A stretch of 64,000 nucleotides of DNA from Obrimoposthia wandeli (GCA_977020255.1 CDROCS010004142.1:1-64000), one strand, 5' to 3'. Shown: positions 48,812 through 64,000, counted from the stretch's first letter. Notes: generated from the letters alone by a model not told the origin. A program made the numbers and translations.

Positions 48812-49396
48812 ATGATTGATGAGGCTTTGGTTTTTATAAAAAATAATTTGAATCAATATATACATTTACAGTTGTTTAGTGGGGCTGATGAGGTCGTAGA
48901 GAATCATGTCGTGTTTCTTGAGGGCAATAGCTTAGAGTCTATTTCCTTTAGTAGTGGATTTGTTTCATTATTATTGGTCAACATTGAAGAGGAAAAAACA
49001 TTAAGGTCAGCTAATTTGTACAGCAGAGCCACACCTAACGGTTCAAGCGTAACGACTCGGCCAGAAATTAAGCTTAATCTTTATATCTTGTTTGTTGCAC
49101 GATTTGAGCAATACGAAACATCACTTAAATACATATCCTTAATTTTAAAATACTTCCAATCTAATCGATCATTTAGCGCCAATCAGGATGCAAATTTAAG
49201 TGCAGATATCGGTAAATTAAACATCGAATTAATAACTCAACAAGGCAATGAGTTAAATGAAATGTGGGGAACCTTAAAAATAGGTTATCAACCATCATTA
49301 TTATACAAACTCAGTTTGCTAGTGTTTATGGATGGAAGTATTGAACCCAAATCAGAGGTACAAAATATGGCACTTGATTTGAAGGATTCGGTTTGA
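48812..49396 (+). CDS. eCIS Afp16/Pvc16-like cap (tail terminator), DUF4255
   Basis: LVNIEEEK, LNLYILF.A.F..Y..SL..IS....FQ and WG.L...YQPS.LYK. Confidence 0.85.
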   Translation: MIDEALVFIKNNLNQYIHLQLFSGADEVVENHVVFLEGNSLESISFSSGFVSLLLVNIEEEKTLRSANLYSRATPNGSSVTTRPEIKLNLYILFVARFEQYETSLKYISLILKYFQSNRSFSANQDANLSADIGKLNIELITQQGNELNEMWGTLKIGYQPSLLYKLSLLVFMDGSIEPKSEVQNMALDLKDSV

Positions 49397-50268
49397 AATA
49401 TTTACCTCTCTTAGAGTTAACGATCAAGCATAACTATTACACAGCAGGTGTTTCAACTGACTTTAGTGTAATACCTGATGTGAATACTCAGCAGATGTTG
49501 CGAAATTATAAGTGTATTTGCAAAAAAAGCACGACGGGTTTTATTGTTTATCAAAGTGTTGAAACGCACCCAGTTAATGAAACGGGTGAGGCAGAAGCCG
49601 CTTTACAAGAAACCCCTTTTATTACGCTAGATCCCTCGCATCGCTTTATTTTTGATATGAAGCTAATTAACACTGATCATCATTTATTTACAGATTTCAG
49701 CGCACATTCAGCACAAAAACATAGTGACATTATTTATCTAACGGATGGATCAGGTTTAAATCAACAAACATTAACAATGACATCAATAGATTCAACAGTG
49801 CAAGGCAAGCACTTTGCTCAAATACATATTGGGTTAGAGGGCATTAAGCCTAGAGATATTGGGCATCAGCAGTATTTTCTTGAGTTTTCAGCCAAATCAC
49901 TACCTTGGCAATATTTTCTTATTGAAAATGAAAGCAATGATAACAACTCAGTTTTCTCTATTACTCATGAGACTAGCAATGAAGCTAATGGCATTCATTT
50001 TGAATCGGTTACTCCTTTAGAAAGTAAACTCTTCCACCACTTACAAAGTAGTTATCCAAATTCAACCATTCATTGCTTTCAATCAACAAGAGCAGTGGCA
50101 TGCCAGCAAAGTAGTCATAAAGGGATTCAATTAATGAGAGAGGGAGAAAATTTTATAGAAAATTTAGCTAACCCTACTCTTAGCAACATAAATCGTATTA
50201 ATGAAAAAGAGGAAGGTGGAGTCGCTACTCGAGATTACTTTTATCACGTAGTTACTCATATAACGTAA
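49393..50268 (+). CDS. eCIS-associated protein, candidate cap adaptor
   Basis: Coupled between cap and sheath genes; L..L.I.H.YY N-terminus; position matches the second cap gene of AlgoCIS-type loci (inference). Confidence 0.55.
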   Translation: MKYLPLLELTIKHNYYTAGVSTDFSVIPDVNTQQMLRNYKCICKKSTTGFIVYQSVETHPVNETGEAEAALQETPFITLDPSHRFIFDMKLINTDHHLFTDFSAHSAQKHSDIIYLTDGSGLNQQTLTMTSIDSTVQGKHFAQIHIGLEGIKPRDIGHQQYFLEFSAKSLPWQYFLIENESNDNNSVFSITHETSNEANGIHFESVTPLESKLFHHLQSSYPNSTIHCFQSTRAVACQQSSHKGIQLMREGENFIENLANPTLSNINRINEKEEGGVATRDYFYHVVTHIT

Positions 50269-50295
50269 AATCTATCAATCATAGGAAGTTAGAAA

Positions 50296-51987
50296 ATGGC
50301 CACTCAATATATGACTCCCGGTGTTGTTGTTGAAGAAGTTTCAACATTACCACCTTCAGTCGCCTCAGTATCAACGGCGATACCTGCTTTTTTAGGTTAC
50401 ACACAAAAATCAATGGCAACAGAAAGTCGCTCTCAAGTTTTAAGAATCAATAACATGCTTGAGTATGAAACGTATTTTGGTGGGCCATTATTGAAAGCCT
50501 ATACGGTGAATGTTAGTCAGGCTAGCCCTCAAGTTTGGGGGATTAATAGCATTATTAACAGTGATGAGGGACAACCTCAATTTAGCCTATATTATGCAAT
50601 GAGTATGTATTTTAAAAACGGTGGAGGAAGTTGCTACGTGGCCTCTTTAGGGGATTATGCTACGACACCTAAAGCTAAAGATTTTAGTACGGCTTTAGCG
50701 GCGATTGAAAGAGAAGATGAGCCAACTATCATCGTACTTTGTGATGGGTTATTACTAGATTCTGCTAAATATTATGCGCTTTGTCAGGAGGTTTTAAGCC
50801 AGTGTAATAAACTAGGTGATCGATTTGCAGTGTTTGATTTATTTGAAAGCGATGAAGACGGCGCTAACTTTAGAGGTGGCATAGGCACTAACTATTTAAA
50901 ATACGGCGCTGCTTATAGCTCCCATTTGATGACAACACTGACGTATCAATATCAAGAAGATAGCATTAATATTTCTGGCCTCCCCATTACTGCTGATCAA
51001 GCTAGTTGGGAGATTAGGCTGGGTGCTCATGGTATGCAAATTGGTTTTATCGGGCCTGTTGCAAGTGATCCTAAGTATAAAATTACTGCAGGTAGCGATG
51101 GAAGTGCTCTAAGTATCAACGTTAACGACGATGATATTTCGGTGTTGAATGCGCGAGGAAAGAGTGCGGTTGAAATACTAGTCGTTTGGGATGCATTGAA
51201 TGCTCAGGAGCAAGGTGGTTTTAGTCTTGAAACAATAGGCACCGGTTTAGATGAAGCAGGGAGCTTATTAAGTGGAGAAGGGATTACGACAACCGGTACA
51301 AGTAGTGAAAAATTAGCGCTAGTCGGCCCATTTCCGAGCTTAGGCAGTATAAAAGAAGATAAAACCGCGCTTTATAATTTGATTAAAAACCAGCTGTCTA
51401 AGCAATATGTACAACTAGCTTCCTCTTCGGCTGTTGCGGGTGTTTACGCCAGAGTTGATCGTGATAGAGGCGTTTGGAAAGCCCCTGCTAATGAGAGTCT
51501 TGCGGCTGTTATTGGACCCACTAAAAAAATAAACCACGATGAACAAGCGTTATTAAACGTGACACAAAGTGGTAAATCAATCAATGCAATACGTGCTTTT
51601 ACAGGCAAAGGAACCCTCGTTTGGGGAGCAAGAACCTTGGCAGGTAATGACAATGAATGGCGTTATGTCTCTGTGCGAAGACTGTTCAATATGATTGAAG
51701 AATCAAGTTTAAAAGCAACCGCCTTTGCGGTGTTTGAGCCTAATGATGCAACCACCTGGTTAAAAGTCAAAGCCATGATTGAAAGTTTCTTGTTCGGTTT
51801 ATGGGAACGTGGTGCTCTGGCAGGACCTACACCAGAATCTGCCTATTTTGTTCACGTAGGTTTAGGTAAAACCATGACAGCACAAAATATTTTAGAAGGC
51901 GTTATGAATGTTGAAATAGGCGTTGCAGCGGTAAGACCTGCTGAATTTATTGTTTTAAAGTTCAGTCATAAATTGCAAGAAGCTTAG
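50296..51987 (+). CDS. eCIS contractile sheath protein (Afp2/3/4-like)
   Basis: TPGV..EE, AIPAF.GYT, RGVWKAPAN, GART..GN..EWRYV.VRR and RPAEFI...FS. Confidence 0.96.
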   Translation: MATQYMTPGVVVEEVSTLPPSVASVSTAIPAFLGYTQKSMATESRSQVLRINNMLEYETYFGGPLLKAYTVNVSQASPQVWGINSIINSDEGQPQFSLYYAMSMYFKNGGGSCYVASLGDYATTPKAKDFSTALAAIEREDEPTIIVLCDGLLLDSAKYYALCQEVLSQCNKLGDRFAVFDLFESDEDGANFRGGIGTNYLKYGAAYSSHLMTTLTYQYQEDSINISGLPITADQASWEIRLGAHGMQIGFIGPVASDPKYKITAGSDGSALSINVNDDDISVLNARGKSAVEILVVWDALNAQEQGGFSLETIGTGLDEAGSLLSGEGITTTGTSSEKLALVGPFPSLGSIKEDKTALYNLIKNQLSKQYVQLASSSAVAGVYARVDRDRGVWKAPANESLAAVIGPTKKINHDEQALLNVTQSGKSINAIRAFTGKGTLVWGARTLAGNDNEWRYVSVRRLFNMIEESSLKATAFAVFEPNDATTWLKVKAMIESFLFGLWERGALAGPTPESAYFVHVGLGKTMTAQNILEGVMNVEIGVAAVRPAEFIVLKFSHKLQEA

Positions 51988-52024
51988 ATAAAGACATTTT
52001 GTTTATTATTGAGGAGATACCAGC

Positions 52025-52498
52025 ATGGCATTAACTAAGCAAGACATTCAGGCGAGTTACCCTTTACCTGTATATAACTACAGAGTTGAAATAGGGGGTG
52101 TTGCAATAGGCTTTTCTGAGGTATCAGGATTAACCATCGCCTATGAAACTTTTACTTATAAAGAAAGCCCGACAGGTAGCGGCGTTGCAGGGCCTAGAGT
52201 GTTTAATATGCCCTCACAATCTCAGGCAATCACAGTGACTTTGAAAAAAGGTATCGTGCCAATTGAAAGCTTAAGTTATTTATATAACTGGATCAAAGAA
52301 ATACAAACAAATCAGGTTGAGAAAAAGGATTTGCTGGTGAGCTTGTGCAATGAAAGTGGAGACCCTGTTATTACTTGGAGCGTTAATAATGCATTTCCAA
52401 CGAAGCTGGAGGGGCCAACTTTTGATGCAAATTCTAACGATGCAGCAGTCGAAAGTATTGAGCTAATAGCAGATAGTATCAGTATGAGCGAAGGCTAA
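52025..52498 (+). CDS. eCIS tube protein (Afp1-like, gp19 family)
   Basis: YPLP.YNY.V, FSEVSGL, L.L..E.G.P...W....AFP.K..GP.FDA.SN..A.E. Confidence 0.93.
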   Translation: MALTKQDIQASYPLPVYNYRVEIGGVAIGFSEVSGLTIAYETFTYKESPTGSGVAGPRVFNMPSQSQAITVTLKKGIVPIESLSYLYNWIKEIQTNQVEKKDLLVSLCNESGDPVITWSVNNAFPTKLEGPTFDANSNDAAVESIELIADSISMSEG

Positions 52499-52503
52499 TC
52501 ACA

Positions 52504-52980
52504 GTGGCTGTCAGCAAAAGTGAGATAAAAAACACTTACCCTTTAGCCATATACAATTACCAGGTCTCAATTAGTGATGACAGTAACATTCCTAGTATTA
52601 GTTTTGCAGAAGTATCAGGGTTAGCCATGGAGTATGAGCCTATCGTTTACAAACATGGGATGAGTTTTTTGATGGGAGATTCGCTCATCGCAGGGATGCA
52701 ACAACCGGTAAGAATATCTTTACTCAAAGGCGTGGTAAAGGGTGGGAATTATTTATATGACTGGATTTATCAAAGCCATAATCAGCCTTACTATGCGAAT
52801 GATCAGCGCGATATCTTTATTGATTTATGTGATGAGAAAGGTGAGCCAATTATTAGATGGGTAGTGAGTAAAGCACTGCCTATAAAGCTTGAAGCGCCTA
52901 CCTTTGATGCGAATAGCTCACAAGTTGCAATTGAAAGTATGGAGTTACAAGCAGCGACAATAAAGGTGGAATATCTTTAA
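52504..52980 (+). CDS. Second eCIS tube-family protein
   Basis: Paralogous motifs YPL..YNY.V, F.EVSGL and P.KLEAPTFDA. Confidence 0.9.
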   Translation: MAVSKSEIKNTYPLAIYNYQVSISDDSNIPSISFAEVSGLAMEYEPIVYKHGMSFLMGDSLIAGMQQPVRISLLKGVVKGGNYLYDWIYQSHNQPYYANDQRDIFIDLCDEKGEPIIRWVVSKALPIKLEAPTFDANSSQVAIESMELQAATIKVEYL

Positions 52981-53000
52981 ATACATGACAGGAGGTAAGT

Positions 53001-53474
53001 ATGGCTCATGCAGCGGCTAAAACTTTAGGCCAAGTCCCATTATTAGGTTATCGATTTTCAGTTGTTATTTTCAGTGGTGGGATACTGCCAAACCCGATTG
53101 ATTTTAGGTTTAAGAAAGTCTCCGGTATCAGTGCCAGTGTATCCACCATGAATGTTGAAGAAGGAGGGCAAAATTTATATAGCCATCGTTTACCTGAAAA
53201 AGTGCAATATGAAAATTTAGTGCTAGAAAGGGGAATGCCACTGGTTTCTTCTTTGGGCGTTGAATTTAGTAATTCGCTTTCTCTGTTTCAATTTTACCCC
53301 TCTAATATACTGGTTTCACTCTTAGATGAGGCCGCCTTGCCTGTCTCTAGCTGGCTGTTTATAAAGGCTTACCCTGTTAGTTGGAGCTTGTCGGATTTAG
53401 ATGCTGAAGCTAATAGCATAGCGATTGAAACAATGGAATTAGCTTACGAGCGATTTCAGACAATAAGGTTGTAA
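53001..53474 (+). CDS. Afp5-like tube initiator protein
   Basis: D.RF.KVSG, EGGQN...H.LP....Y.NLVLERG and AYPV.W..SD.DA. Confidence 0.9.
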   Translation: MAHAAAKTLGQVPLLGYRFSVVIFSGGILPNPIDFRFKKVSGISASVSTMNVEEGGQNLYSHRLPEKVQYENLVLERGMPLVSSLGVEFSNSLSLFQFYPSNILVSLLDEAALPVSSWLFIKAYPVSWSLSDLDAEANSIAIETMELAYERFQTIRL

Positions 53475-53479
53475 ACAAA

Positions 53480-53641
53480 ATGCCTGTTGAAATAAGAGAG
53501 TTAGTGATAAGAGCCGTGGTCAACGATAGCTCATCAAGCAGTGAGACGCGTCAACAAATAGATGAAACTGAGCGGCAGCTGGTTATTCAAGAATGCGTGC
53601 GGGAAATAATGAAATTACTGGAAAAAAATAAAGGGCGGTAA
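53480..53641 (+). CDS. Afp6-like small protein (DUF5908), absent from the ORF track
   Basis: 53-aa MPVEIRELVIRAVV...ECVREIMKLL read by hand. Confidence 0.88.
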   Translation: MPVEIRELVIRAVVNDSSSSSETRQQIDETERQLVIQECVREIMKLLEKNKGR

Positions 53642-53646
53642 CTGAA

Positions 53647-54357
53647 ATGGATTTTAGTGACACTTTCAAACTTGAAAAACTAACGATTCAAGCGGTTGAG
53701 ATTAAAGAAGGTAAAAAAAACAGTCTAACGGGGGATGCATTTCAAGTAATGTTTAATCCGCAAAGTGTCGCTCAACGCATCGCTAATAAACTAATAAAAA
53801 CGCCATCAATTAATGAAAATTCTGCTGATGAAACCCAATTCGCGGGTGCCGAACCTGAAATCTTAGATTTATTGCTCACTCTAGATGGAACAGGAGTTAA
53901 AGATTATGCTGCTGCTTTAGGGTTAGGTGGGGCGAGTAAAACGGTAACAGAACAGATAAGTGAGTTTAAAAAGTTATGTTATGACGTGGATGGTGAAAAA
54001 CACGAACCCAATGTCGTGAATGTAAGATGGAATAAAGTGATTGACGCTAATTATCGATTGGGATCCGTCGATATAGTATATAAATCCTTTGCCAGAAATG
54101 GAGAACCCCTTCGAGCAGAGTTGAAAATATCATTTCTCAAATACTCTTCTGTTGTGAATGCCAGCAGCGCAATGTCGTCCCCTGATGTATCACATATTCA
54201 TAGGGTAAAAACAGGCGATACACTGCCTTTGTTAGCTAACAAAATTTATGGCTCACCCAAATACTACTTATTGATAGCAGCGGCTAATAACTTAGATAAT
54301 TTCAGATCTCTAGAACCCGGAACACAGCTTTCTTTTCCTCCATTACGCTCAAAATAG
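53647..54357 (+). CDS. Afp7-like tube initiator with LysM domain
   Basis: F.VMFNP, G.PLRA...ISF and H.VK.GDTLP.....IYG. Confidence 0.92.
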   Translation: MDFSDTFKLEKLTIQAVEIKEGKKNSLTGDAFQVMFNPQSVAQRIANKLIKTPSINENSADETQFAGAEPEILDLLLTLDGTGVKDYAAALGLGGASKTVTEQISEFKKLCYDVDGEKHEPNVVNVRWNKVIDANYRLGSVDIVYKSFARNGEPLRAELKISFLKYSSVVNASSAMSSPDVSHIHRVKTGDTLPLLANKIYGSPKYYLLIAAANNLDNFRSLEPGTQLSFPPLRSK

Positions 54358-54370
54358 AGAGATGAAATAG

Positions 54371-56020
54371 ATGGCACCTACAACAATAACAATCCAGAGC
54401 GAAGGTCAAGCACTCGCTACACACTATAAAATTATTAGCGTGGATGTGATTAAACAAGTAAATCGTATCCCTTGTGCAGAGATCGCTTTAGTTGATGGCA
54501 ATATCGCACAGCAGACGTTTGCGTTGAGTGAAGATGATTTTTTTGACTTAGGTAAAGAGATAGAGATCAAATTACGCCGGGAAGGCAGCGATGAATTTAC
54601 TGTCTTTAAGGGTTTAGTGAGCAAACAAAACATTGAAGCCAGCGAGCATGGTTCTCAATTGATCGTTAGTTTAGATGATATTGCTATTAAAGCGGCGCAA
54701 TTGCGCAACACTTGCCTGTATGAAGAGCAAACCGATGCGGACATTATCACTAGCCTGATCGAAAAACATAACTTGACGCTCGCCAGTATTGAGGCGACAG
54801 AGCCTGAACACCTGCAGTTAACACAGTACAACTGTACCGATTGGGATTTCATGCTTTTAAGAGCGCAGAGCCAAGGGTTAATCGTCAATGTTGATGATGG
54901 CGTAATGTCTGTTGTCGCCGTCGATTTAAGCCAGGACCCCCACTATAAGTTTGAATACGGGTTAAGTGGTGTACATGGAATTAAACGCTTTGAAATGCAA
55001 AATGATGCATTAGCTAATTATGAAGCACTTAAAACTCAACACTGGGATATGAGTTTGCAAGAGAGTAGTGGAATTGAAGCTAATGCAGATCTTGCATTAC
55101 AACAAGGCGCATTTTCGATTTCAAAAAATGCAGAGACATTTACCACCCAAGAACACTACTTACACGCACCAATCAGTTTAGATTCTCAAGAGGTGCAAGC
55201 TTGGTTAAATGGAAAAATCATTCGAAGTCGTCTTGCGCGCTTTAAAGGCAGTATTAGCGTGTCGGGTATCGGCGAGATAAAGCCATTAATAATGGTAGAG
55301 ATAAAAGGGTTAGGTTCAAGATTTAATGGCAAAGCCTTGGTGACTGGGGTTCGCCATCGAGTGAGTGTCTCACAAGGCTGGGTCAGCGATTTACAATTGG
55401 GGCTAAATGACAGCGATTTTGCTGCAAATACCGCCATTAATGATCATCCAGCAGCGGGGTTATTAACAGGAGTCAATAGTCTTTGTATTGGAAAAATCGC
55501 GCCTTTTGAAGAAGACCCCAAACAAGAGTTTCGTTTAAAAGTGCAACTGGTCGCCGTGGGTGAAAAACCTATTTCAATATGGGCAAGAATAGCCAATATG
55601 GATGCAGGTAAAACTCATGGTAGCTTTTTTTATCCAGATGAAGGAGATGAAGTAGTCGTAGGGTTTTTTAATCAAGACCCACGTCATGGCGTTATATTAG
55701 GCAGCATGTACAGCTCTGCCAGCCCACCTATTGAAGATTGGGGAACGCTTGATGAAGACAATTTTAAAAGAGGGTTTGTCACTAAATCAGGTAGTAGGAT
55801 TGAGTTCAGTGATGAAGCAGAAGCCAAAATATTGATCAAAACAGCGACAGAGAATCAAATATTACTCGATGATGAAGCCAAAGAAATTAGCGTAACAGAT
55901 CCACACGGCAATAGCATTGTCATGAGCGAAGCGGGAATCACCATCACCAGTTGTAAAGACTTGATTGTAAAAGCTGAAGGTAAGGTCAGTATTACCGGTG
56001 AAGAGGTTGACATTAAATAG
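54371..56020 (+). CDS. Afp8-like VgrG spike
   Basis: VNRIP.A.I...DG, QY.CTDWDF...RA and WAR.A..DAG...G.FF.P..GDEV.VGF...DPR...ILG. Confidence 0.94.
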   Translation: MAPTTITIQSEGQALATHYKIISVDVIKQVNRIPCAEIALVDGNIAQQTFALSEDDFFDLGKEIEIKLRREGSDEFTVFKGLVSKQNIEASEHGSQLIVSLDDIAIKAAQLRNTCLYEEQTDADIITSLIEKHNLTLASIEATEPEHLQLTQYNCTDWDFMLLRAQSQGLIVNVDDGVMSVVAVDLSQDPHYKFEYGLSGVHGIKRFEMQNDALANYEALKTQHWDMSLQESSGIEANADLALQQGAFSISKNAETFTTQEHYLHAPISLDSQEVQAWLNGKIIRSRLARFKGSISVSGIGEIKPLIMVEIKGLGSRFNGKALVTGVRHRVSVSQGWVSDLQLGLNDSDFAANTAINDHPAAGLLTGVNSLCIGKIAPFEEDPKQEFRLKVQLVAVGEKPISIWARIANMDAGKTHGSFFYPDEGDEVVVGFFNQDPRHGVILGSMYSSASPPIEDWGTLDEDNFKRGFVTKSGSRIEFSDEAEAKILIKTATENQILLDDEAKEISVTDPHGNSIVMSEAGITITSCKDLIVKAEGKVSITGEEVDIK

Positions 56021-56040
56021 CACTTTAAAGGGGACTTGTC

Positions 56041-56232
56041 ATGAAACGCATCACTTTAGATTTAAAGGTAGATGAAGCCAATTTAGTTTTAGAGGGGTTA
56101 GCGAACTTGCCTTTTATTAAAGTACATGAGCTGATCGCCAAAATCCATCAACAAGCCAGCACCCAAGTTGTTGATATTAAGACAGGTACTGAAAGTTTTA
56201 ATGAACAACCAGATAGCGTAATAGCGGGGTAA
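56041..56232 (+). CDS. Small eCIS-associated hypothetical protein
   Basis: 63 aa, AAGGGG RBS, in operon context. Confidence 0.7.
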   Translation: MKRITLDLKVDEANLVLEGLANLPFIKVHELIAKIHQQASTQVVDIKTGTESFNEQPDSVIAG

Positions 56233-56236
56233 ATGC

Positions 56237-56665
56237 ATGGCTGACTCATCTACATTTTTAGGAAAAGGCTGGGCTTTTCCTCCCTCTTTTGGTGCACAAG
56301 GTAAGCAAGTGGCAATGGTTGCAGAGGCTCAAAATATACATCAATCATTACAGGTTTTATTTGCAACAAGTATAGGAGAGCGGGTGATGTTGGAAAGTTA
56401 TGGATGTCGCTTGACTGACTTTATATTTGAAGAGATTGATCAGGGACTCGCCAATAACATCACCAGCATGCTGCAAAATGCGATCAACCACCATGAGCAA
56501 CGCGTTATCTTAGATAGCATTGAAGTGAGCCAACATGATGATGTGCAGGGGTTACTCAATATTAGTATGAGCTACACCATTCGCACAACGAACTCTAGAT
56601 ACAATATGGTATATCCCTTTTTCGTAAGTGAATCAAGAATGAGTAAGGTCACTTTAAATGTCTGA
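56237..56665 (+). CDS. Afp9-like gp25 baseplate wedge protein
   Basis: FLG.GW.FPP.F, T..GERVM...YG, E.RV and TNSRYNMVYPF. Confidence 0.94.
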   Translation: MADSSTFLGKGWAFPPSFGAQGKQVAMVAEAQNIHQSLQVLFATSIGERVMLESYGCRLTDFIFEEIDQGLANNITSMLQNAINHHEQRVILDSIEVSQHDDVQGLLNISMSYTIRTTNSRYNMVYPFFVSESRMSKVTLNV

Positions 56666-57083
56666 TTTTATTGTAGTAGATGGAGACAAAGCACTTTTTA
56701 TACCCAGTTTTGGAGCAGCCATTGTGGTGGTGCAACCTGGTTCTATAACCGGTAGTGGTGATGCTACATTTGCCAATAAAAAAATATGCATTGAAGGTGA
56801 TGAAGCGTCAGTGAGTGTCACAGGTTGCATGTATATGACGCCTCAATACTCAATACCCGGCTCAGGTACCATTACTATCGATTCTCTTAGCAATGATCAA
56901 GTGAGCCTTAAAACATCCACTAAAGCGACACTCATGATAATGGTAGGGGCTAATTTTGATGCGAAATTTAGTGTGCAAGTGCCAGCGCAACAACCGGGCA
57001 GTCCTCCTGTGCCAGACTCCACAGCGGATTATGCCGGTAAGGGCAGTTTCATTACCACCAACACTAAGTTTAAAGGGAGTTAG
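56658..57083 (+). CDS. Candidate non-canonical spike-tip (PAAR-like) protein
   Basis: 141 aa, Gly/Pro-rich beta-type sequence between gp25 and Afp11; no canonical PAAR gene after the spike. Confidence 0.5.
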   Translation: MSDFIVVDGDKALFIPSFGAAIVVVQPGSITGSGDATFANKKICIEGDEASVSVTGCMYMTPQYSIPGSGTITIDSLSNDQVSLKTSTKATLMIMVGANFDAKFSVQVPAQQPGSPPVPDSTADYAGKGSFITTNTKFKGS

Positions 57084-57085
57084 CG

Positions 57086-60000
57086 ATGCCGATTAGTTCG
57101 AATCAGCGGCCTATTTATAGGGATGGAACGAGTCAACCAAATCGTATAAAAGCAGCACTTTCTCCCGAGTCTGTTGCCATTGATGGGCGCACAACTAAAG
57201 AGTTATTACATTTCATAAGGCAGTTTTGTAGTCAAATAAATTATTTTAATGATGAGGGAATAATCAATGGCGATTGGCAAGAGTTTTTTCCAAAGAGTAT
57301 TGATTTAGATGATTTAATGGCCTTTATGGACGACCCAAGCACGGCCACGACTGTTCAACTGGCGCTGTATCAGCGCCCGCATTTCGTTTTATTATTAAGC
57401 TTTTTAGCGTTATTAAAACAAACACAATCAAAATTAAATACCATAAGTAAACGGCACATCGATTTTTATTATCAGCGTTTTTTAGGTTTAAGTAAACAGC
57501 CTGCACAAGCTGACCAGGTAAACGTATTAATTGAATTAGCAAAATACACTGAGCAGCATTATTTAAAGGCGGGAACTTTACTAAATGCAGGAAAAAGCGA
57601 AGCAGGTACTGCACTTATTTATGAGACACAAAAAGGCGCTTTTTTGAGCCAAGCACGGGTCGCTCGCTTAAGCAGTCTTTTTACTGATGTCGACTATGTA
57701 AATATCAGTAAGGCAAGAGATGATTATATTAAAAATAAACCCAGGGCAACGTCATTAGAAATACTGTTAATGATGCTGCAATTTGCTTTAGGTTATCCAG
57801 AACCTAACAATGCGTTACCTGATTACGAAGGTATATCTAGCGGCGAGCCTAGTGCACCGAGTATTGAGTTATTACGCGTTCTCAAAATACAGCTGGCATT
57901 TGTAGATAGAACAAGTGCTGGACTACATATGACCTTCACTGATTTCAATGAATTAATGCGATTAAAGAATCAACGCTTACCTGATCAGCAAGTTGAAGTC
58001 GATAGGCAGTTGCAAAGTGGTTTTACGCAAGACTGGAAGCAAATAAACAATGTTTTAGTGGAGATAGCGCGCGTAAAAGGCGTGGTGCTAAGTATTGCTG
58101 ATAATCAAATAACCGATTTTGATAAAAACTTACTTAAAGCTTTGAATAACAACGAGCTAGACTTTTCTGGATTGGTAGGCGTTAACAATATAACGGACTT
58201 GTATCACGAACGAACGCGTAATGATGCGAAAAATTTTGTTATTACAATGTTAGGAATTGAAGTGGAAAATAGTAGTGCTTCGCTGACATTTGTCAAAATG
58301 ATGCAGGTAAAAGTACGTATAGATTTACAGTGGGCGCGGATTAATTATTTATTAGAACAGGCGGCTTTAAATAAAAATAAAATCATTAATATTGATCCTC
58401 AACATTCTGATGCATTTCAAATTAATTTAGAAAAGCTACTGCTTAATGAAAATACAACATCTATTGATTGGCCGAATAACATCAATAGTATTGATGAATT
58501 ATATAGCGCATTACGTCAGTTAGAAAAATATTTCCACCTTGCGGCTTATGAGTTTAGTTATCTATTAAATATAATAGTCAGTGATAGTTTAAACCTAGAT
58601 GGCGTATCTGTTAGTTCAATACAGTGGGCGTCGATTGATAAAATTTTATTAAAAGCGGCAAAAGATAAACGCCATGAGCAGCGTGTTGAAATACTTAATA
58701 ACTTGTCTCAGTCAGCAAGCGCTTCTAACAAAGGCAGTGTGCAACAAATAATCGCGACCATGCTCAGCCATGTATTGTCCAAACCAGTAAAGGTGGAGCA
58801 ATTAGAGTCAGCATTCGCTGAAATTAAAACGTGGCTAAATGAGGATGATTTAAGTTATTTACGTCATTACATCAAGATAAACTCAACTGATATCCCTGAT
58901 TGGGGCAAGGTAGAGGCGATGTTGTTAGGTGCCTGGCAGCAGATTTTGGGCCCAGACATTCCTCAACTTATTCATTGGAAAAACCTATATGCTTTTGATG
59001 ATGCAAAAAAAGCTAACAAGTCTATTGCGCTAGATCAGGTGCAGGCAGAGCGCTGGGCTACCTTTGCGAGAAAAATTAAAGCCAGTGATGATATTGATCC
59101 TCAAAGTAGTGAATTTGGTTGGGCTATTAGCTCACCCATTTTGGTATTAAGTCAGGGGCAACGTGAAGTAAGGCTTACCTTAAACATAGAGCCATTAGTC
59201 ATCGATATTAAAAAAATCACTGAGGTTATTGCTCAACAGCCGTTTAAGTTGTTAGCCAGTACCACTGATGGTTGGATAGAGCCTGAGCAGCTGACATTAG
59301 AAGTAGTGATGGATGACAAAAATGAATCGCTAATAGCATTACATATTAAGCTAATTTTTTCTGCTCAAGCAGCGCCGATTATTTGTGTACCTAATGAAGA
59401 GGCACAAAACAACCCTAAGGTGCAGTGGCCTACGCTTAAAATTCTATTGCGCCATATCTTAATAACAAGCGATGCTCAAGAGGAGGGTGCTTCAAATAAT
59501 ACTGAGTCATCCCAAGTGCAATATCGAACTTATTATCAAGAATTTAAGCCACTGGTTTTAAATAGTATAAATGTTGAAGTAGCGGTGACAGGGTTAAAGG
59601 ATATTTACATTAGCAATGATGAAAAAACATTAGACATCAATAAGCCTTTTTATCCGTTTACGCAGCTCCCTGTTGTGGGAAGCCGATTTTATATAGTGCA
59701 TCAAGAATTGGTTTACAAAAAGCTAGATCAGATAGTCTTTAATGCACAGTGGATGGCGTTGCCAAAGGCTTTGGATGTCCATTACCATGGGTATCCTAGC
59801 TTAAATAGTTTAAAAGATGGAGAAGAAAACTTCACCGTAGAAGTCGCTATTAAAGATGAATATATAAAAGAGTCTATTATCTCTCCTATCTCTGTCATGT
59901 TATTAGAAAACGAGCTAAAAGTGGATCGCATTACCAGTACACAAGAGGCTTCTTACGATAGGGATTTATCTCTAAAACCTGCGGGTAGCGTTAAAAAGTG

Positions 60001-61534
60001 GGGCAGATATTTACAATGGGAACTCAATTCACCTGATTTTCAACATACAGATTATCCAGCACTGGCAGGGGCAAGTGCAACTCAGCTTGCCATAGATTTA
60101 GTCAATAAAAATGGCAAATTGGATAAAAAAGATTACTTAATAAATCCGCCTTATACACCTAAACTAAAAACGTTGAGCATAGATTATAAAGCCTCTGTCA
60201 TGATTGATGTCAATAGCTTTAGGGATGAGCAACATGCAGAGAGGATGTTTCACATACAGCCCTTTGGCTATGCTGAATATGCGCTAGAGAGCAATATAGA
60301 GCGCTATTTACTGCCACAATTTAACAACCAAGGTGAGCTCTATATTGGTTTAGAAAATGTCCTTTTACCGCAAAACTTAAGTGTGTTGTTACAAATGGCA
60401 GAAGGTAGCAGTGATGCCGACGTTAAGCCTCAAAGTGTTTCTTGGAGCTACCTTAGTGATAACCAATGGGTGGCGTTAGCAGGTGATAGCGTGATGAGTG
60501 ATGGCACTCGTGGCTTAATTAATTCAGGGATTATTGAGTTTGCATTAGTGGCGGTTAAAGCGAATACATTGCTACCTAATGACCTGTTTTGGTTACGTGC
60601 CAGCATTGAAAATAACACCCGAAGTGTTTGCGATATGGTAGCGGTGCATACACAAGCGGTACAAGCATCTTTTGTAATACCTGCGAGTATAGATCAAAAA
60701 AAACATGTATTGGCAGCTGATAGTATTAAAAAGCTATTGAAGGCAGAGCCACAAATAAAAAAAATAAAGCAACCCTATAGCTCTTTTGGGGGGCGCGAGA
60801 GCGAGCCAGATGAGGGGTTTTATCGGCGTATTAGTGAGCGTTTACGCCACAAAAATAGAGCGTTAAACCAATGGGATTATGAACATATAATTTTACAACA
60901 GTTTCCACAAATTTATAAAGTGAAATGCATTCCCGCTTCATTACTAAGCACTGATGAGCCAGTGGGAACGATTAAGTTAATCGTGATACCTGATATTCGC
61001 CAACGTTTTCCGTTTGATCCATTTGAGCCCAAAGTACCGGCAAATTTGATTTACAGCATCAATCAATTTTTAGCGGATAAAAAAGCTGCATCAGCAAAAA
61101 CCTTGGTGGCTAACGCTCAATACATCCCAGTAAAAGTCCAATTAGGGGTGAAGTTCCACTCAGGCTTTAATCCCGAATATTATCAACAACAACTTAATAA
61201 TCAGTTAAATCAGTTTTTATCACCTTGGGCTTATGAACAAGGGCGCGATATTGTCATTGGTGGAAAAATATACGCAAATAGCATTATTCATTTCATTGAA
61301 CAGCGTGAATACATTGATTACGTCACAGATATTAAATTGTTTAAAGGAATTGAGCAGCAGTCTGTAGAACCCGGGGATGCTGAAGGATATTTCGTTGAAG
61401 CAGATCAGGTGGACGCCGTTTTAGTAGGCGCTCAGCAGCATCAATTTGATGTGTTAGTCGATAAGGTTTTTCAAACAGAATCTTCAATTGGCATTAATTA
61501 CATGGAAATCGAATTAGATTTTCAGCTAGTTTAG
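57086..61534 (+). CDS. Afp11-like baseplate protein (1482 aa) with a large repeat insertion
   Basis: RDGTSQ..R, PH..L.L.FL, FYY...L, QP..SFGG..E, RISERLRHKNRA...DYE and NPWAY-like SPWAY. Confidence 0.93.
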   Translation: MPISSNQRPIYRDGTSQPNRIKAALSPESVAIDGRTTKELLHFIRQFCSQINYFNDEGIINGDWQEFFPKSIDLDDLMAFMDDPSTATTVQLALYQRPHFVLLLSFLALLKQTQSKLNTISKRHIDFYYQRFLGLSKQPAQADQVNVLIELAKYTEQHYLKAGTLLNAGKSEAGTALIYETQKGAFLSQARVARLSSLFTDVDYVNISKARDDYIKNKPRATSLEILLMMLQFALGYPEPNNALPDYEGISSGEPSAPSIELLRVLKIQLAFVDRTSAGLHMTFTDFNELMRLKNQRLPDQQVEVDRQLQSGFTQDWKQINNVLVEIARVKGVVLSIADNQITDFDKNLLKALNNNELDFSGLVGVNNITDLYHERTRNDAKNFVITMLGIEVENSSASLTFVKMMQVKVRIDLQWARINYLLEQAALNKNKIINIDPQHSDAFQINLEKLLLNENTTSIDWPNNINSIDELYSALRQLEKYFHLAAYEFSYLLNIIVSDSLNLDGVSVSSIQWASIDKILLKAAKDKRHEQRVEILNNLSQSASASNKGSVQQIIATMLSHVLSKPVKVEQLESAFAEIKTWLNEDDLSYLRHYIKINSTDIPDWGKVEAMLLGAWQQILGPDIPQLIHWKNLYAFDDAKKANKSIALDQVQAERWATFARKIKASDDIDPQSSEFGWAISSPILVLSQGQREVRLTLNIEPLVIDIKKITEVIAQQPFKLLASTTDGWIEPEQLTLEVVMDDKNESLIALHIKLIFSAQAAPIICVPNEEAQNNPKVQWPTLKILLRHILITSDAQEEGASNNTESSQVQYRTYYQEFKPLVLNSINVEVAVTGLKDIYISNDEKTLDINKPFYPFTQLPVVGSRFYIVHQELVYKKLDQIVFNAQWMALPKALDVHYHGYPSLNSLKDGEENFTVEVAIKDEYIKESIISPISVMLLENELKVDRITSTQEASYDRDLSLKPAGSVKKWGRYLQWELNSPDFQHTDYPALAGASATQLAIDLVNKNGKLDKKDYLINPPYTPKLKTLSIDYKASVMIDVNSFRDEQHAERMFHIQPFGYAEYALESNIERYLLPQFNNQGELYIGLENVLLPQNLSVLLQMAEGSSDADVKPQSVSWSYLSDNQWVALAGDSVMSDGTRGLINSGIIEFALVAVKANTLLPNDLFWLRASIENNTRSVCDMVAVHTQAVQASFVIPASIDQKKHVLAADSIKKLLKAEPQIKKIKQPYSSFGGRESEPDEGFYRRISERLRHKNRALNQWDYEHIILQQFPQIYKVKCIPASLLSTDEPVGTIKLIVIPDIRQRFPFDPFEPKVPANLIYSINQFLADKKAASAKTLVANAQYIPVKVQLGVKFHSGFNPEYYQQQLNNQLNQFLSPWAYEQGRDIVIGGKIYANSIIHFIEQREYIDYVTDIKLFKGIEQQSVEPGDAEGYFVEADQVDAVLVGAQQHQFDVLVDKVFQTESSIGINYMEIELDFQLV

Positions 61535-61546
61535 TGAGGAATAGTC

Positions 61547-62728
61547 ATGAATATAAACACTAAAAGCCGTAGTGAGTTAAAAACGTTTTTTCGTAAGAAC
61601 AGTATACCCACAGAAAGTAATTTTGCAGATTTTATTGATGGCATGTCAAATGCTAAAGATGATGGTTTAGTTAAGACTCCGGGTAATCCATTAAGCATTG
61701 AAGCGAGTGCGGGTAGCACGCTAGAAATACTTAATCTGTATTTAAATATAGAAGACACTAATCCTATGTTCTCTTTTGCTCTCAACGATGGTTTTAGTAT
61801 TAACGACCACGCGAATAATAGCCGGCTATTCATTGATAAAAGTAGCGGCAATATAGGCATTGGCACAATTAACCCTAAGTTTCCCCTAGATATAGCGGGA
61901 GACATGAGTGCACAAGGCAGCATTGTTCCCTCTTTAGGTGATGGCAGTAATAAAGGGATTGTTTTCCCTAAAATAGGCGTTGATGCCGCAGCTCTTCAAT
62001 ATTACTCCCAAGGTAGAGGCAAAACGGTGCTAGAAATAAGTAACAGCAATGGCATTAATGATCATGTTGCATTAATGGCCAGTGGCAATGTCGGTATAAA
62101 CACCAAAGATCCTAAAGCCAAACTACATATTAATTTTGAAAATAATGTGCAAAAAGCAAAAATTAGCGGCACCTTCATTATTGGTGCCACTAACGCAACA
62201 CATCTAGCGTTTGATCATAATGAAATTATGGCTAAAACCAGTGCCACGAAAGCGGGCACCCTCTTCTTACAAAATGAAGGGGGAGTCGTGCACATTGGCG
62301 GTAGTTTGAAAGTGGCTAGTGGGATAGTTCAGCAAGATTGGCAAAGCGTCAGTTTTGTGAATGGTTGGGTTAATTATCATGGTAGTACATATAACAGAGC
62401 AGGTTATTTTAAGGACAGTCAAGGAATTGTGCATTTAAAAGGTTTAGTTAAAAATGGCAGTAGCACTATCTTTACCTTACCGAATGGTTATAGGCCAAGT
62501 AGGCAAGAGTTATTCAGTGCTATTGCTAATAGTAAAATTGCTAGAGTGGATGTACACAAAAATGGAGCAGTAAAAATGGTTCTAGGCGAAGGTGCATGGC
62601 TAAGTTTAGATGGCCTTAGTTTTAGAGCGGCAGCTCCATCTATTATTGGTCCTATCGGTCCTATTGATCCTGTTGTTCATACCGATCCTGTTATCGGTAT
62701 TGGTGTTTTAAATTCTCGTTTTAGATGA
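61547..62728 (+). CDS. eCIS tail fibre / adhesin (Afp13-like)
   Basis: N-terminal R.ELK.FF....IPTE.NF.D.ID anchor, GNIGIGT..P and GNVGI.T..P repeats, C-terminal W....F.NGW...Y.KD..G.V.L.G domain. Confidence 0.8.
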   Translation: MNINTKSRSELKTFFRKNSIPTESNFADFIDGMSNAKDDGLVKTPGNPLSIEASAGSTLEILNLYLNIEDTNPMFSFALNDGFSINDHANNSRLFIDKSSGNIGIGTINPKFPLDIAGDMSAQGSIVPSLGDGSNKGIVFPKIGVDAAALQYYSQGRGKTVLEISNSNGINDHVALMASGNVGINTKDPKAKLHINFENNVQKAKISGTFIIGATNATHLAFDHNEIMAKTSATKAGTLFLQNEGGVVHIGGSLKVASGIVQQDWQSVSFVNGWVNYHGSTYNRAGYFKDSQGIVHLKGLVKNGSSTIFTLPNGYRPSRQELFSAIANSKIARVDVHKNGAVKMVLGEGAWLSLDGLSFRAAAPSIIGPIGPIDPVVHTDPVIGIGVLNSRFR

Positions 62729-62776
62729 GGATAGTATTGAAAATAATTATATAAAGCGAATCAAAGTTGAGTGCCT

Positions 62777-64000
62777 ATGGAAAATTATCAACATAAAATT
62801 GCCGAATCCAAGTTAGATATCAGTGAAGACTACGCAGCGCTTCGCCAGTTGGGTATTGATTATATCTCTCGCTTGGGCAGTGAACAATGGACAGATTACA
62901 ACAGCCATGATCCGGGCATCACTATTTTAGAGCAAGTGTGTTACGCAATGACTGATTTGGGTTATCGGATGAATCACAGTATGAGCGATCTGCTTGCTCA
63001 AGGAGGCAAAGATCCATATGACAGCTTAATTGATGCGCCGCAAATATTGAGCTCGAACCCTGTCACATTAATGGATTTGCGCAAGTTGATTATCGATATA
63101 AAAGGTGTCAAAAACGCCTGGATAGAACCGGTACTTAGCCCACAGCCCGCACTGTATTTTAATAGAGAAAAGAAACAACTGAAACTCCAACCAGGTGAAG
63201 AGTTAGTGGAGCCTGTCGTGTTACAAGGCCTTTATCAAGTATTAGTTGAGCCTGATAGAGATTTTCAAAATGATTTGTATGCCAGAGTTGCACAAAGGTT
63301 ACATGCGCATCGTAACCTCTGTGAAGATTATAGTGAATTGAGCATACTCACGCCGCAAAAAATACAGTTGCATGCACGCATTGAAATTTCAGCGCAGCAA
63401 GATGCTGAACAATTATTGCAAAATATATTCAGCGCGATTGAAACGTATTTTTCAGCCCCCGTTAATTTTTATAGTTTGAATGAATGTTTACAAAAAGGCC
63501 TGCTGATAGATGATATTTTTAATGGTGTGCAACTTGAACATGGCTTTATTGACACTTTACAATTGCAGCAATTAGAGCGGCGTACGCAGATACGCATCTC
63601 TGATTTGATTCAGATTATTATGGCGGTTGCTGGTGTCAGGACTGTACAACGTATTCGCTTTGAAATAAAAGGTGAAGAAGAATCAGCTATCCCTAATGAT
63701 TGGTTGCTGACCCTTGATCAAGGGGCTTTTTCTCAATTAGATTTACATAATAGTGATTTTATTTTGGTGAAAGAGCAATTACAAATAAGCCTTCCTAAAG
63801 CGGATGTTATCAGTCGTTATCGCCAATTAAAGCGTGAGCAAAAAATAACACAGTCAACACGTAGTAATGTTCCAGAGTTACCCAGTGCGAGAACAAGAAA
63901 TATAGAACAATACACTTCAATAATGCATCAATTCCCCGATGCTTATGGTGTTAACGCCAACGGACTCGCTCAAAGTGAAGGGCGCAAACGCTTAGCTCAA
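62777..64000 (+). CDS. Afp12-like baseplate protein, partial (runs off the window)
   Basis: Open for all 408 codons when read by hand; WTDYN.HDPGITILE..CYA.TDLGYR, RNLCED and HQFP..YG. Confidence 0.93.
   Translation, partial: MENYQHKIAESKLDISEDYAALRQLGIDYISRLGSEQWTDYNSHDPGITILEQVCYAMTDLGYRMNHSMSDLLAQGGKDPYDSLIDAPQILSSNPVTLMDLRKLIIDIKGVKNAWIEPVLSPQPALYFNREKKQLKLQPGEELVEPVVLQGLYQVLVEPDRDFQNDLYARVAQRLHAHRNLCEDYSELSILTPQKIQLHARIEISAQQDAEQLLQNIFSAIETYFSAPVNFYSLNECLQKGLLIDDIFNGVQLEHGFIDTLQLQQLERRTQIRISDLIQIIMAVAGVRTVQRIRFEIKGEEESAIPNDWLLTLDQGAFSQLDLHNSDFILVKEQLQISLPKADVISRYRQLKREQKITQSTRSNVPELPSARTRNIEQYTSIMHQFPDAYGVNANGLAQSEGRKRLAQ

What the first reader, a model, noticed from the sequence alone, without database searches (positions are those of the whole stretch)
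57690..58970. Afp11 baseplate carries an insert of about 425 aa built from four W-anchored repeats
Between the conserved ..ARLSSLF and HWKNLY..W..F segments lies a helical-looking region with DWKQINNVLVEIA, QWARINYLLEQAA, QWASIDKILLKAA and DWGKVEAMLLGAW. The Trp codons at 58034, 58331, 58625 and 58901 are 99, 98 and 92 codons apart. With six copies per baseplate, this could form an extended cage, anchor or cargo-binding module that I do not know from described eCIS structures.
Basis: partly seen in the sequence, partly recalled or inferred. Interest (0 to 1): 0.72.

Follow-up and report, generated by a model that had tools for sequence, protein, structure and literature searches.

The report
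Helical repeat insert in eCIS baseplate protein
The main baseplate protein of a phage-tail-like injection machine carries a real, roughly 420-residue all-helical domain made of four diverged repeats; it matches no known structure or family, yet it is common in uncultured bacteria and has not been described in the papers I checked.

Summary
The 1482-aa gene at 57086-61534 is an Alg11/Cis11-type (gp6-like) baseplate wedge protein in an intact contractile-injection-system operon. Residues 206-627 have no counterpart in any solved homologue: Alg11 has 38 residues at this site and Anabaena Cis11 about 50. The Alg11-type spike-cage region is present separately, at about 655-1050, so the insert is not the known cage.

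Repeats R1 and R2 are strongly supported (hhalign 99.4%, E 5e-21). R3 and R4 are diverged copies, supported only at profile level (about 94%).

AlphaFold2 gives a confident all-alpha model (pLDDT 91.7, pTM 0.88) closed by two flanking beta strands, which indicates a domain inserted at a hairpin tip. Foldseek (PDB and viral), VIA-align, the ESM Atlas, Pfam and PDB profile searches gave no significant match.

The domain is not rare. It occurs in 264 clusters (50% identity), always in this protein, across many phyla. Unit number varies, and at least two close relatives lack it.

Function is inferred only. The most likely role is a peripheral structural or adaptor module near the junction of the baseplate ring ("iris") and the cage. 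I class it as a new variant of a known kind, of moderate interest.

The parts
57086..61534 (+). Alg11/Cis11-type (gp6-like, Baseplate_J) baseplate wedge protein, 1482 aa
   Evidence: ORF. Pfam Baseplate_J E 1e-8 at residues 1219-1391. PDB phmmer: Alg11 E 2.8e-119, Cis11 All3317 E 7.6e-113.
57086..57700 (+). Conserved N-terminal part (residues 1-205): core-bundle helices and the first strand of the hairpin (197-205)
   Evidence: Aligns with Alg11 12-218, Cis11 243-348, Pvc11 17-178 and Afp11 15-172. Model strand E2-10.
57701..58966 (+). All-alpha insert, residues 206-627 (17 helices), acidic (net charge -11, pI 5.25)
   Evidence: AF2 model me66697d3e20b, pLDDT 91.7, pTM 0.88. No counterpart in solved homologues. 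Charge.
57701..57922 (+). Lead-in segment (206-279) carrying the most conserved loop motif, ALG-x-P-x-PGD-x-LP. Its ALG helix resembles the tail of unit R3.
   Evidence: G236 95%, P238 92%, G241 91% conserved in 93 sequences. hhalign of lead-in vs R3 tail: 93.5%.
57923..58249 (+). Repeat unit R1 (280-388); W317 sits in a long helix
   Evidence: R1-R2 hhalign 99.4%, E 4.6e-21. SW z = 6.3. R1+R2 model m784d661971c8, pLDDT 94.7.
58250..58543 (+). Repeat unit R2 (389-486); W416 (98% conserved)
58544..58819 (+). Repeat unit R3 (487-578); W514; diverged copy
   Evidence: R2-R3 hhalign 94.2%, E 1.2e-7. In-register weak HMM hits in 83 relatives. A 50-nt DNA match at 70% identity between the R2 and R3 W-helices, 294 nt apart.
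58820..58966 (+). Repeat unit R4 (579-627); W606; truncated, diverged copy (two helices)
   Evidence: R3-R4 hhalign 94.6%, E 7.3e-8. In-register weak hits in 57 relatives.
58967..58996 (+). Returning beta strand (628-637, the HWKNLY segment) that pairs with 197-205 and closes the insertion
   Evidence: These are the only two strands in the model, E2-10 and E433-442. W631 is 92% conserved.
59048..60235 (+). Region equivalent to Alg11 257-643, which includes the spike-cage domain IV (Alg11 278-643)
   Evidence: One continuous phmmer alignment, query 655-1472 to Alg11 257-1044, E 3.4e-94. Domain IV limits are from PMC8894135.
60236..61531 (+). C-terminal gp6-like / Baseplate_J part (1051-1482), the most conserved region
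48812..57083 (+). Upstream operon: cap (Pvc16_N), 291-aa unknown, sheath, three tube paralogues, 53-aa ORF at the plug (DUF5908) position, LysM tube initiator, VgrG spike, 63-aa ORF, gp25, spike tip
   Evidence: Pfam. ORFs. Same gene order in L008 and L009.
61547..62728 (+). 393-aa protein in the Alg19/Cis19 position. Its N-terminal ~120 aa are shared with fibre-like genes of related loci.
   Evidence: No Pfam or PDB match. blastp/tblastn to L008, L009, L010, L005 and L006.
62771..64000 (+). Start of the Alg12/Cis12-like wedge partner (705 aa; it runs past the window end to contig position 64888)
   Evidence: phmmer: Alg12 E 5.8e-101, All3315 E 1.1e-96.

Best explanation
The gene encodes the gp6-like wedge protein (Alg11/Cis11 type) of an intact contractile injection system. 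By homology there are six copies per baseplate.

Shown:
- A self-contained, all-alpha domain of about 420 residues is inserted at the tip of a beta hairpin, between the core-bundle region and the cage region.
- The domain consists of a lead-in segment plus four diverged units of about 98 residues. Each unit has a long helix anchored by a conserved Trp.
- It arose by internal duplication and is now a rigid single body.
- It has no detectable catalytic or ligand-binding family signature.
- It is acidic.
- It occurs only in this protein.
- Its unit number varies among relatives, from none to four.

Inferred: it is an accessory structural or adaptor module that projects from the wedge near the iris-cage junction. 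It would give this lineage an extra outer layer, which most plausibly buttresses the cage and iris and/or offers a docking surface for the locus-specific fibre-like proteins encoded just downstream (393 aa and 595 aa). An enzyme or cargo role is less likely.
For: Identity of the protein and the operon.

Insertion geometry:
- The flanks align with Alg11 up to residue 218 and from residue 257.
- The only two strands in the AF2 model lie at its two ends, so the chain enters and leaves at one point.

Confident all-alpha models: pLDDT 91.7, pTM 0.88; 94.7, pTM 0.89.

Repeats.

No family or fold match:
- Pfam.
- PDB profiles.
- Foldseek PDB.
- VIA-align best Z 5.6 and 4.7.
- BFVD viral library.
- ESM Atlas.

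The domain is exclusive to this protein. All 152 best hits are full-length baseplate proteins or look like fragments of them.

Modularity:
- Of 106 full-length relatives, 89 have two strong R1/R2-type units, 13 have one, 2 have three and 2 have none.
- P0229 and P0259 are about 50% identical in the C-terminal part but lack the insert.
- P0229 sits in an otherwise syntenic operon.

Position near the iris-cage junction:
- Alg11 C268, just after the insertion site, forms the disulfide that links cage and iris and is needed for firing.
- Alg11 domains III and IV form the cage (PMC13314943; PMC8894135).

Partner lead: the 595-aa protein has full-length homologues in loci with the insert (L009, L010). 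In the insert-less locus L008 only its first ~110 residues occur, fused to the end of the Afp12 homologue.
Against: - No experiment or complex model places the domain in a baseplate. Its orientation (outward, downward or toward a neighbouring wedge) is unknown.
- I could not inspect model coordinates, so the similarity of the four units in 3D and the nature of the conserved surface are untested.
- The partner co-occurrence rests on three loci against one and may only reflect relatedness.
- High conservation of the ALG-P-PGD loop would fit an interaction site, but nothing identifies the partner.
- Absence of a fold match does not exclude a binding or regulatory function.
Confidence: 0.6

Rival explanations
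1. The six helical arrays are part of the spike cage itself. They form a second wall or an upward or downward extension, enlarging or sealing the compartment around the spike.
For: The insertion site lies just before the cage-forming region (Alg11 257-643 equivalent). The insert is acidic, like the outer cage surface described for Alg11 (PMC8894135). SalCis11 shows that helical additions to the cage do occur (PMC13266070).
Against: There is no sequence or fold similarity to any cage domain, nor to the SalCis11 helical extension. That extension lies inside domain IV, a different site. Close relatives without the insert keep the cage region. Geometry is untested.
Confidence: 0.2
2. The array is a membrane or envelope anchor, or a target-surface receptor-binding module. 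This would be analogous to the baseplate attachment sites that tie T6SSiv and the Anabaena system to membranes.
For: Cage-adjacent sites of Alg11 homologues are described as hotspots for attaching fibres or membranes (PMC8894135). The domain is lineage-specific and varies in length.
Against: The domain is acidic (net charge about -11). The model has no strands other than the two closing the insertion, and no lectin-like or other binding family is detected. Its core motifs are conserved across many phyla and habitats, which is unlike fast-evolving receptor binders. I ran no dedicated transmembrane or hydrophobicity analysis.
Confidence: 0.1
3. The array binds cargo or effector proteins, or a chaperone for them, at the baseplate.
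For: The locus encodes a large downstream protein with a weak nuclease-domain hit that could be an effector. Helical repeat arrays are often protein-binding scaffolds (general knowledge).
Against: In the studied systems cargo sits in the tube lumen or on the spike and is loaded through the tape-measure, ATPase and plug components, not through the wedge (PMC8894135). The insert is conserved, while eCIS effectors are known to be diverse (title and abstract of PMC8213781; not compared here).
Confidence: 0.07
4. It is not a real feature: the repeats are chance similarity in a helical region, or the insert is an assembly or gene-fusion artefact.
For: On the single sequence R4 is not significant and R3 is only marginal.
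Against: The same insert, at the same site and with the same motifs, occurs in more than 100 full-length proteins from independent assemblies. R1-R2 gives E 4.6e-21. The reading frame is open and the window has no N.
Confidence: 0.02

Closest known systems
Alg11 of AlgoCIS, Algoriphagus machipongonensis (PDB 7aeb/7aef/9wsz; PMC8894135, PMC13314943)
   Same: It is the best-scoring solved homologue (E 2.8e-119). The N-terminal core-bundle part, the cage-forming region and the C-terminal gp6-like part are all colinear with the query. The neighbouring genes are the same: spike tip upstream, a fibre-position gene and an Alg12 homologue downstream.
   Different: Alg11 has 38 residues (219-256) where the query has about 450. 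The helical four-unit array is entirely absent. The Alg11 C268-C1000 disulfide has no Cys counterpart at the aligned query position (read from the alignment).
Cis11 (All3317) of the Anabaena thylakoid-anchored CIS (PDB 7b5h; PMC8894136)
   Same: It is a long Cis11 with extra domains, including a cage (E 7.6e-113).
   Different: Its extra N-terminal domain lies at a different site, between query residues 75 and 97. At the query's insertion site Cis11 has about 50 residues. The only structural resemblance is a noise-level Z of 4.5 between Cis11 79-230 and the R3-R4 helices.
SalCis11 of the Salmonella enterica subsp. salamae CIS (PDB 9rce; PMC13266070)
   Same: It is a cage-bearing Cis11 with an added helical element: seven helices, residues 419-549.
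   Different: That extension is described as part of domain IV, downstream of the query's insertion site, and is about 130 aa long. Neither insert profile (4 or 93 sequences) hits 9rce even at E 10. 9rce may postdate the fold libraries, so a structural comparison was not possible.
Afp11 (6rao) and Pvc11 (6j0n), the classical short forms
   Same: They share the N-terminal core-bundle region and the C-terminal Baseplate_J part.
   Different: At 607 and 728 aa they lack both the helical insert and the cage region.

Membership tests
Afp11/Cis11 (gp6-like baseplate wedge protein of contractile injection systems) | C-terminal Baseplate_J / gp6-like domain | tested here: met
   PF04865 E 1e-8, 35.3 bits against a cut-off of 21.1. 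The C-terminal part aligns with Alg11, Cis11, Pvc11 and Afp11.
Afp11/Cis11 (gp6-like baseplate wedge protein of contractile injection systems) | N-terminal helices that form the core bundle with the Afp12 partner | tested here: met
   Query 10-203 aligns with Alg11 12-218 (E 8.6e-23) and with Cis11, Pvc11 and Afp11. The bundle itself is inferred by homology.
Afp11/Cis11 (gp6-like baseplate wedge protein of contractile injection systems) | Operon position after gp25 and spike tip and before the Afp12 homologue, within a full CIS gene set | tested here: met
   Cap, sheath, tubes, tube initiator, VgrG, gp25, spike tip, Alg12-like, tape measure and AAA ATPase are all present.
NCBIfam TIGR02243 (putative baseplate assembly protein, equivalog) | Score above the curated cut-off | tested here: not met
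   33.2 bits against a cut-off of 155.8. Only the C-terminal 170 residues match.
Alg11-type spike cage (domain IV) | Sequence colinear with Alg11 residues 278-643 | tested here: met
   The continuous alignment of query 655-1472 to Alg11 257-1044 covers it. Fold, CBM character and sugar-binding residues were not tested.
Alg11-type spike cage (domain IV) | The helical insert 206-627 is part of, or homologous to, the cage domain | tested here: not met
   The insert lies upstream of the cage-equivalent region and matches no PDB sequence or fold.
SalCis11 helical extension | Detectable similarity to SalCis11 residues 419-549, at the same site | tested here: not met
   Neither profile search hits 9rce at E <= 10. 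The site differs according to the alignment offsets and the text of PMC13266070.
Pfam PF21506 Knl-2-like domain | Score at or above the gathering cut-off (27 bits) | tested here: not met
   The query is not hit. 11 of 93 relatives give sub-threshold hits, the best at 26.6 bits, covering about 30 residues of the W-helix of R2 or R4. I take this as a short helix-motif resemblance only.

The most novel reading that the evidence does not exclude
The Trp-anchored four-unit array is a new protein fold. As a hexamer it forms an outer collar at the iris-cage junction of a large, structurally unstudied branch of cage-bearing injection systems. There it couples fibre or target signals to cage opening and firing, or docks the lineage's own fibre-like proteins.
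Probability: 0.25. Interest if true: 0.7.

Novelty: new variant of a known kind. Interest (0 to 1): 0.5.

Why it matters
Baseplate wedge proteins decide how contractile injection systems sense targets, anchor and fire, and they are the parts being re-engineered for protein delivery. Published structures cover short Afp11/Pvc11 and cage-bearing Alg11, Cis11 and SalCis11. The form found here, with the cage plus a helical array of about 420 residues, is the usual form among this protein's closest relatives. Of the 111 nearest relatives by C-terminal domain, 108 carry the insert. It occurs in Pseudomonadota, Myxococcota, Acidobacteriota, Nitrospirota, Chloroflexota, Calditrichota and others. It has no structure and no family model, and databases call it only 'baseplate J/gp47 family protein'. 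A confident model with no fold match marks a defined target for cryo-EM and for a new domain family. Natural variants with zero to four units offer a ready comparative series.

Tried and rejected
1. Known cage domain. Rejected: the cage-equivalent region is separate and downstream.

2. SalCis11 helical extension. Rejected: different site and no profile hit.

3. Known fold. The whole insert and R1+R2 alone were searched with Foldseek PDB, VIA-align wide, BFVD and the ESM Atlas. The best Z values were 5.6 and 4.7, below the tool's stated noise level for helical models. The HEPN-like and designed-bundle rows reflect generic helix packing.

4. Pfam. Only sub-threshold Knl-2-like hits in some relatives. 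A single Barstar hit (E 7e-4, below cut-off) in one relative I dismissed as noise.

5. Stand-alone or other-context copies of the repeat. None found: insert-only hits are short fragments that begin mid-motif.

6. The search for related loci with the 93-sequence alignment failed because it lacks a sufficiently conserved stretch. The 4-sequence alignment gave three MAG loci.

7. Co-occurrence test of the insert with the 595-aa protein across 201 genomes of one phylum. Not feasible: only the centre genome had the system. Four loci examined by hand give only a lead.

8. Recent DNA-level duplication. No tandem repeat. The only DNA similarity is a 50-nt, 70% match between the R2 and R3 W-helices.

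9. Model coordinates could not be read in scripts. The units were therefore not superposed on each other and no surface mapping was done.

Full report
**Context**

The window is the first 64 kb of a 95-kb bacterial-type contig (about 39% G+C). The contig sits inside a 1.35-Gb, 6,912-contig assembly, so it is most likely from a bacterium associated with a eukaryotic host.

From 48812 onward the + strand carries a complete contractile-injection-system operon. In order, it encodes:
- cap (Pvc16_N)
- a 291-aa unknown protein
- sheath
- three gp19-type tube paralogues
- a 53-aa ORF at the plug position
- a LysM tube initiator
- the VgrG spike
- a 63-aa ORF
- gp25
- the spike tip
- the 1482-aa protein under study (57086-61534)
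- a 393-aa protein
- an Alg12/Cis12 homologue of 705 aa (E 6e-101 to Alg12)
- a 595-aa unknown protein
- the tape measure
- an AAA ATPase
- a 1310-aa protein with a weak nuclease-domain hit

**Observation**

The four motifs are present. The Trp codons are at 58034, 58331, 58625 and 58901 (W317, W416, W514, W606), spaced 99, 98 and 92 codons apart.

phmmer against all PDB chains makes Alg11 of AlgoCIS the closest solved relative (E 2.8e-119).
- Query 10-203 aligns with Alg11 12-218, and query 655-1472 with Alg11 257-1044. About 450 query residues therefore face 38 residues in Alg11.
- Anabaena Cis11 has about 50 residues at the site.
- Afp11 and Pvc11 lack this region and the following cage region altogether.

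According to PMC8894135 the Alg11 cage is domain IV, residues 278-643. That corresponds to query residues of about 677-1050. This protein therefore has the known cage and, in addition, an unrelated insert upstream of it.

**Repeats**

On the single sequence:
- R1 (290-388 in this test) vs R2 (389-486): Smith-Waterman z = 6.3, with 0 of 500 shuffles reaching it.
- R3 is marginal, with z = 3.0 and 2.2.
- R4 is not significant.

With 93-sequence family profiles:
- R1-R2: 99.4% probability, E 4.6e-21 over 64 columns.
- R2-R3: 94.2%.
- R3-R4: 94.6%.
- The ALG helix of the lead-in segment matches the tail of R3 at 93.5%.

An HMM built only from R1 and R2 units was run on 106 full-length relatives. 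Its weak additional hits cluster in register at the R3 position (83) and the R4 position (57). Only 3 of 165 fall outside the insert.

The family consensus of a unit is a short helix (F..MM..K..ID), a long helix (W..IN..L..AG..R) and a third helix (F..NL..ALG). The four-unit reading is therefore supported, with two clear and two strongly diverged copies. At DNA level only a 50-nt, 70% match between the R2 and R3 W-helices remains, so the duplication is old.

**Structure**

AlphaFold2 on the 93-sequence alignment gives pLDDT 91.7 and pTM 0.88. The model has 17 helices and only two strands. One strand is at each end (protein residues 197-205 and 628-637), so they must pair with each other. This is the geometry of a domain inserted at a hairpin tip. 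R1+R2 modelled alone give pLDDT 94.7.

No search returned a significant match:
- Foldseek vs PDB: no hit at E <= 0.001 for either model.
- VIA-align vs 48,161 chains: best Z 5.6 and 4.7, under the tool's stated noise level for helical models.
- BFVD viral library: nothing.
- ESM Atlas: TM <= 0.26 by shape and 0.78 or lower by features.
- Pfam finds nothing in the query insert at a meaningful E-value.
- PDB sequence profiles of the insert find nothing, including SalCis11.

Eleven of 93 relatives give just-sub-threshold hits of about 30 residues to PF21506 (Knl-2-like) over a W-helix. I treat that as a short-motif resemblance.

SalCis11's published helical extension (residues 419-549, PMC13266070) lies inside domain IV. 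This follows from the alignment offsets, so it is at a different site.

**Distribution**

The word-based search found only three relatives of the insert. An exhaustive profile search of 1.84 billion cluster representatives found 264 at E <= 0.001 and 120 at E <= 1e-30.
- All 152 listed hits are either full-length baseplate proteins with the same four-part architecture (97) or what appear to be fragments of them.
- Of the 111 closest relatives by the C-terminal domain, 108 carry the insert.

Named sources include Rubrivivax, Accumulibacter, Kentrum, Thioploca, Methylococcales, Competibacteraceae, Halioglobus, Sorangium, Nannocystaceae, Polyangia, Acidobacteriota, Nitrospiria, Anaerolineae, Calditrichaeota and Aestuariivirga. 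All are annotated only as baseplate J/gp47 or hypothetical.

Per genome the system is sporadic: 1 of 201 sampled genomes in the phylum of one carrier.

Chen et al. 2019 noted that afp11 is 'notably longer' in subtype Ib (PMC6899500). I found no description of this helical array in the papers searched.

**Modularity**

- Among 106 full-length relatives, 89 have two strong R1/R2-type units, 13 have one, 2 have three and 2 have none.
- Proteins of about 1,325-1,370 aa lack roughly one to one and a half units.
- P0229 (1067 aa) and P0259 (1085 aa) have intact N termini and about 50% identity in the C-terminal part, yet lack the array. P0229 lies in a fully syntenic operon.

The array is therefore dispensable for the basic machine. 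That fits a peripheral accessory module.

**Likely placement and role (inferred)**

The insertion site corresponds to Alg11 219-256. Just after it lies Alg11 C268, which forms the disulfide with C1000 that links the upper cage to the iris. Loss of that disulfide blocks firing. Domain II holds the spike, and domains III and IV form the cage (PMC13314943).

Six helical arrays would therefore emerge near the iris-cage junction. The domain is acidic (net charge -11, pI 5.25; family median -12). It has no cysteines and no catalytic signature. Its most conserved non-core element is the ALG-x-P-x-PGD-x-LP loop, a candidate contact site.

One lead for a partner concerns the 595-aa protein between the Alg12 homologue and the tape measure.
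- It has full-length homologues in two other insert-bearing loci (L009, L010).
- In the insert-less locus L008 only its first ~110 residues occur, fused to the C terminus of the Afp12 homologue.
- With three loci against one, this is a lead, not a result.

My best reading (0.6) is a structural or adaptor layer that buttresses the cage and iris and/or docks locus-specific fibre-like proteins. The rivals are an extra cage wall (0.2), an anchor or receptor module (0.1) and a cargo dock (0.07). The artefact reading is refuted.

**Verdict**

The insert is not a feature peculiar to this genome. It is the standard form of a widespread but structurally unstudied lineage of cage-bearing injection systems. 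I class it as a new variant of a known kind: a known baseplate protein carrying an undescribed domain with no fold match. Interest is moderate, because extra domains on Cis11 proteins are an established theme while this one is large, confidently modelled, common and unnamed.

**Limits**

- Model coordinates could not be analysed.
- No multimer model could be run.
- 9rce may be missing from the fold libraries.

Noticed in passing
window 1-64000 (G000:C4142, contig 95,057 b): The contig is bacterial in gene content and about 39% G+C, but it belongs to a 1.35-Gb assembly of 6,912 contigs. It is presumably a symbiont, commensal or contaminant of a eukaryotic host. An earlier scan note reports a second, different (subtype IIb) injection-system cluster on another contig of the same assembly.
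   Followed up: no
contig 64928-66715 (L007:3928-5715), just beyond the window: A 595-aa protein with no Pfam or PDB match lies between the Alg12 homologue and the tape measure. It has full-length homologues in insert-bearing loci L009 and L010. In the insert-less locus L008 only its first ~110 residues occur, fused to the C terminus of the Afp12 homologue. It is a possible partner of the helical insert.
   Followed up: partly
window 61547-62728: The N-terminal ~120 residues of this 393-aa protein are shared with the gene at the same position in five related loci. Its body differs, and some relatives carry a Peptidase_S74 fibre domain. This fits a conserved baseplate-attachment module on interchangeable fibre-like bodies.
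   Followed up: partly
contig 69922-73854 (L002:5922-9854): A 1310-aa ORF lies after the AAA ATPase. It has a weak, sub-threshold Endonuclea_NS_2 hit (E 9e-5, 23.1 bits vs cut-off 27) at residues 1089-1169. It is a candidate effector of the system.
   Followed up: no
window 53480-53641 and 56041-56232: Two small ORFs (53 aa and 63 aa) occupy the positions of the DUF5908 plug gene and of a conserved small gene between VgrG and gp25 in related loci L008 and L009.
   Followed up: no
window 58326-58375 and 58620-58669: A 50-nt direct DNA match (70% identity, 294 nt = 98 codons apart) covers the Trp helices of units R2 and R3. It is the only DNA-level trace of the duplication.
   Followed up: yes
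relatives P0214, P0197, P0002 (W-helix of R2 or R4): Sub-threshold hits to Pfam PF21506 (Knl-2-like domain; best 26.6 bits vs cut-off 27) occur in 11 of 93 relatives, over about 30 residues of a Trp-anchored helix. The window's own protein is not hit.
   Followed up: partly
L010 17123-20627: In this Competibacteraceae MAG locus the Afp12 homologue matches in two pieces across two called genes, and the 595-aa-type protein is merged into the second one. This suggests a frameshift or a gene-calling problem.
   Followed up: no
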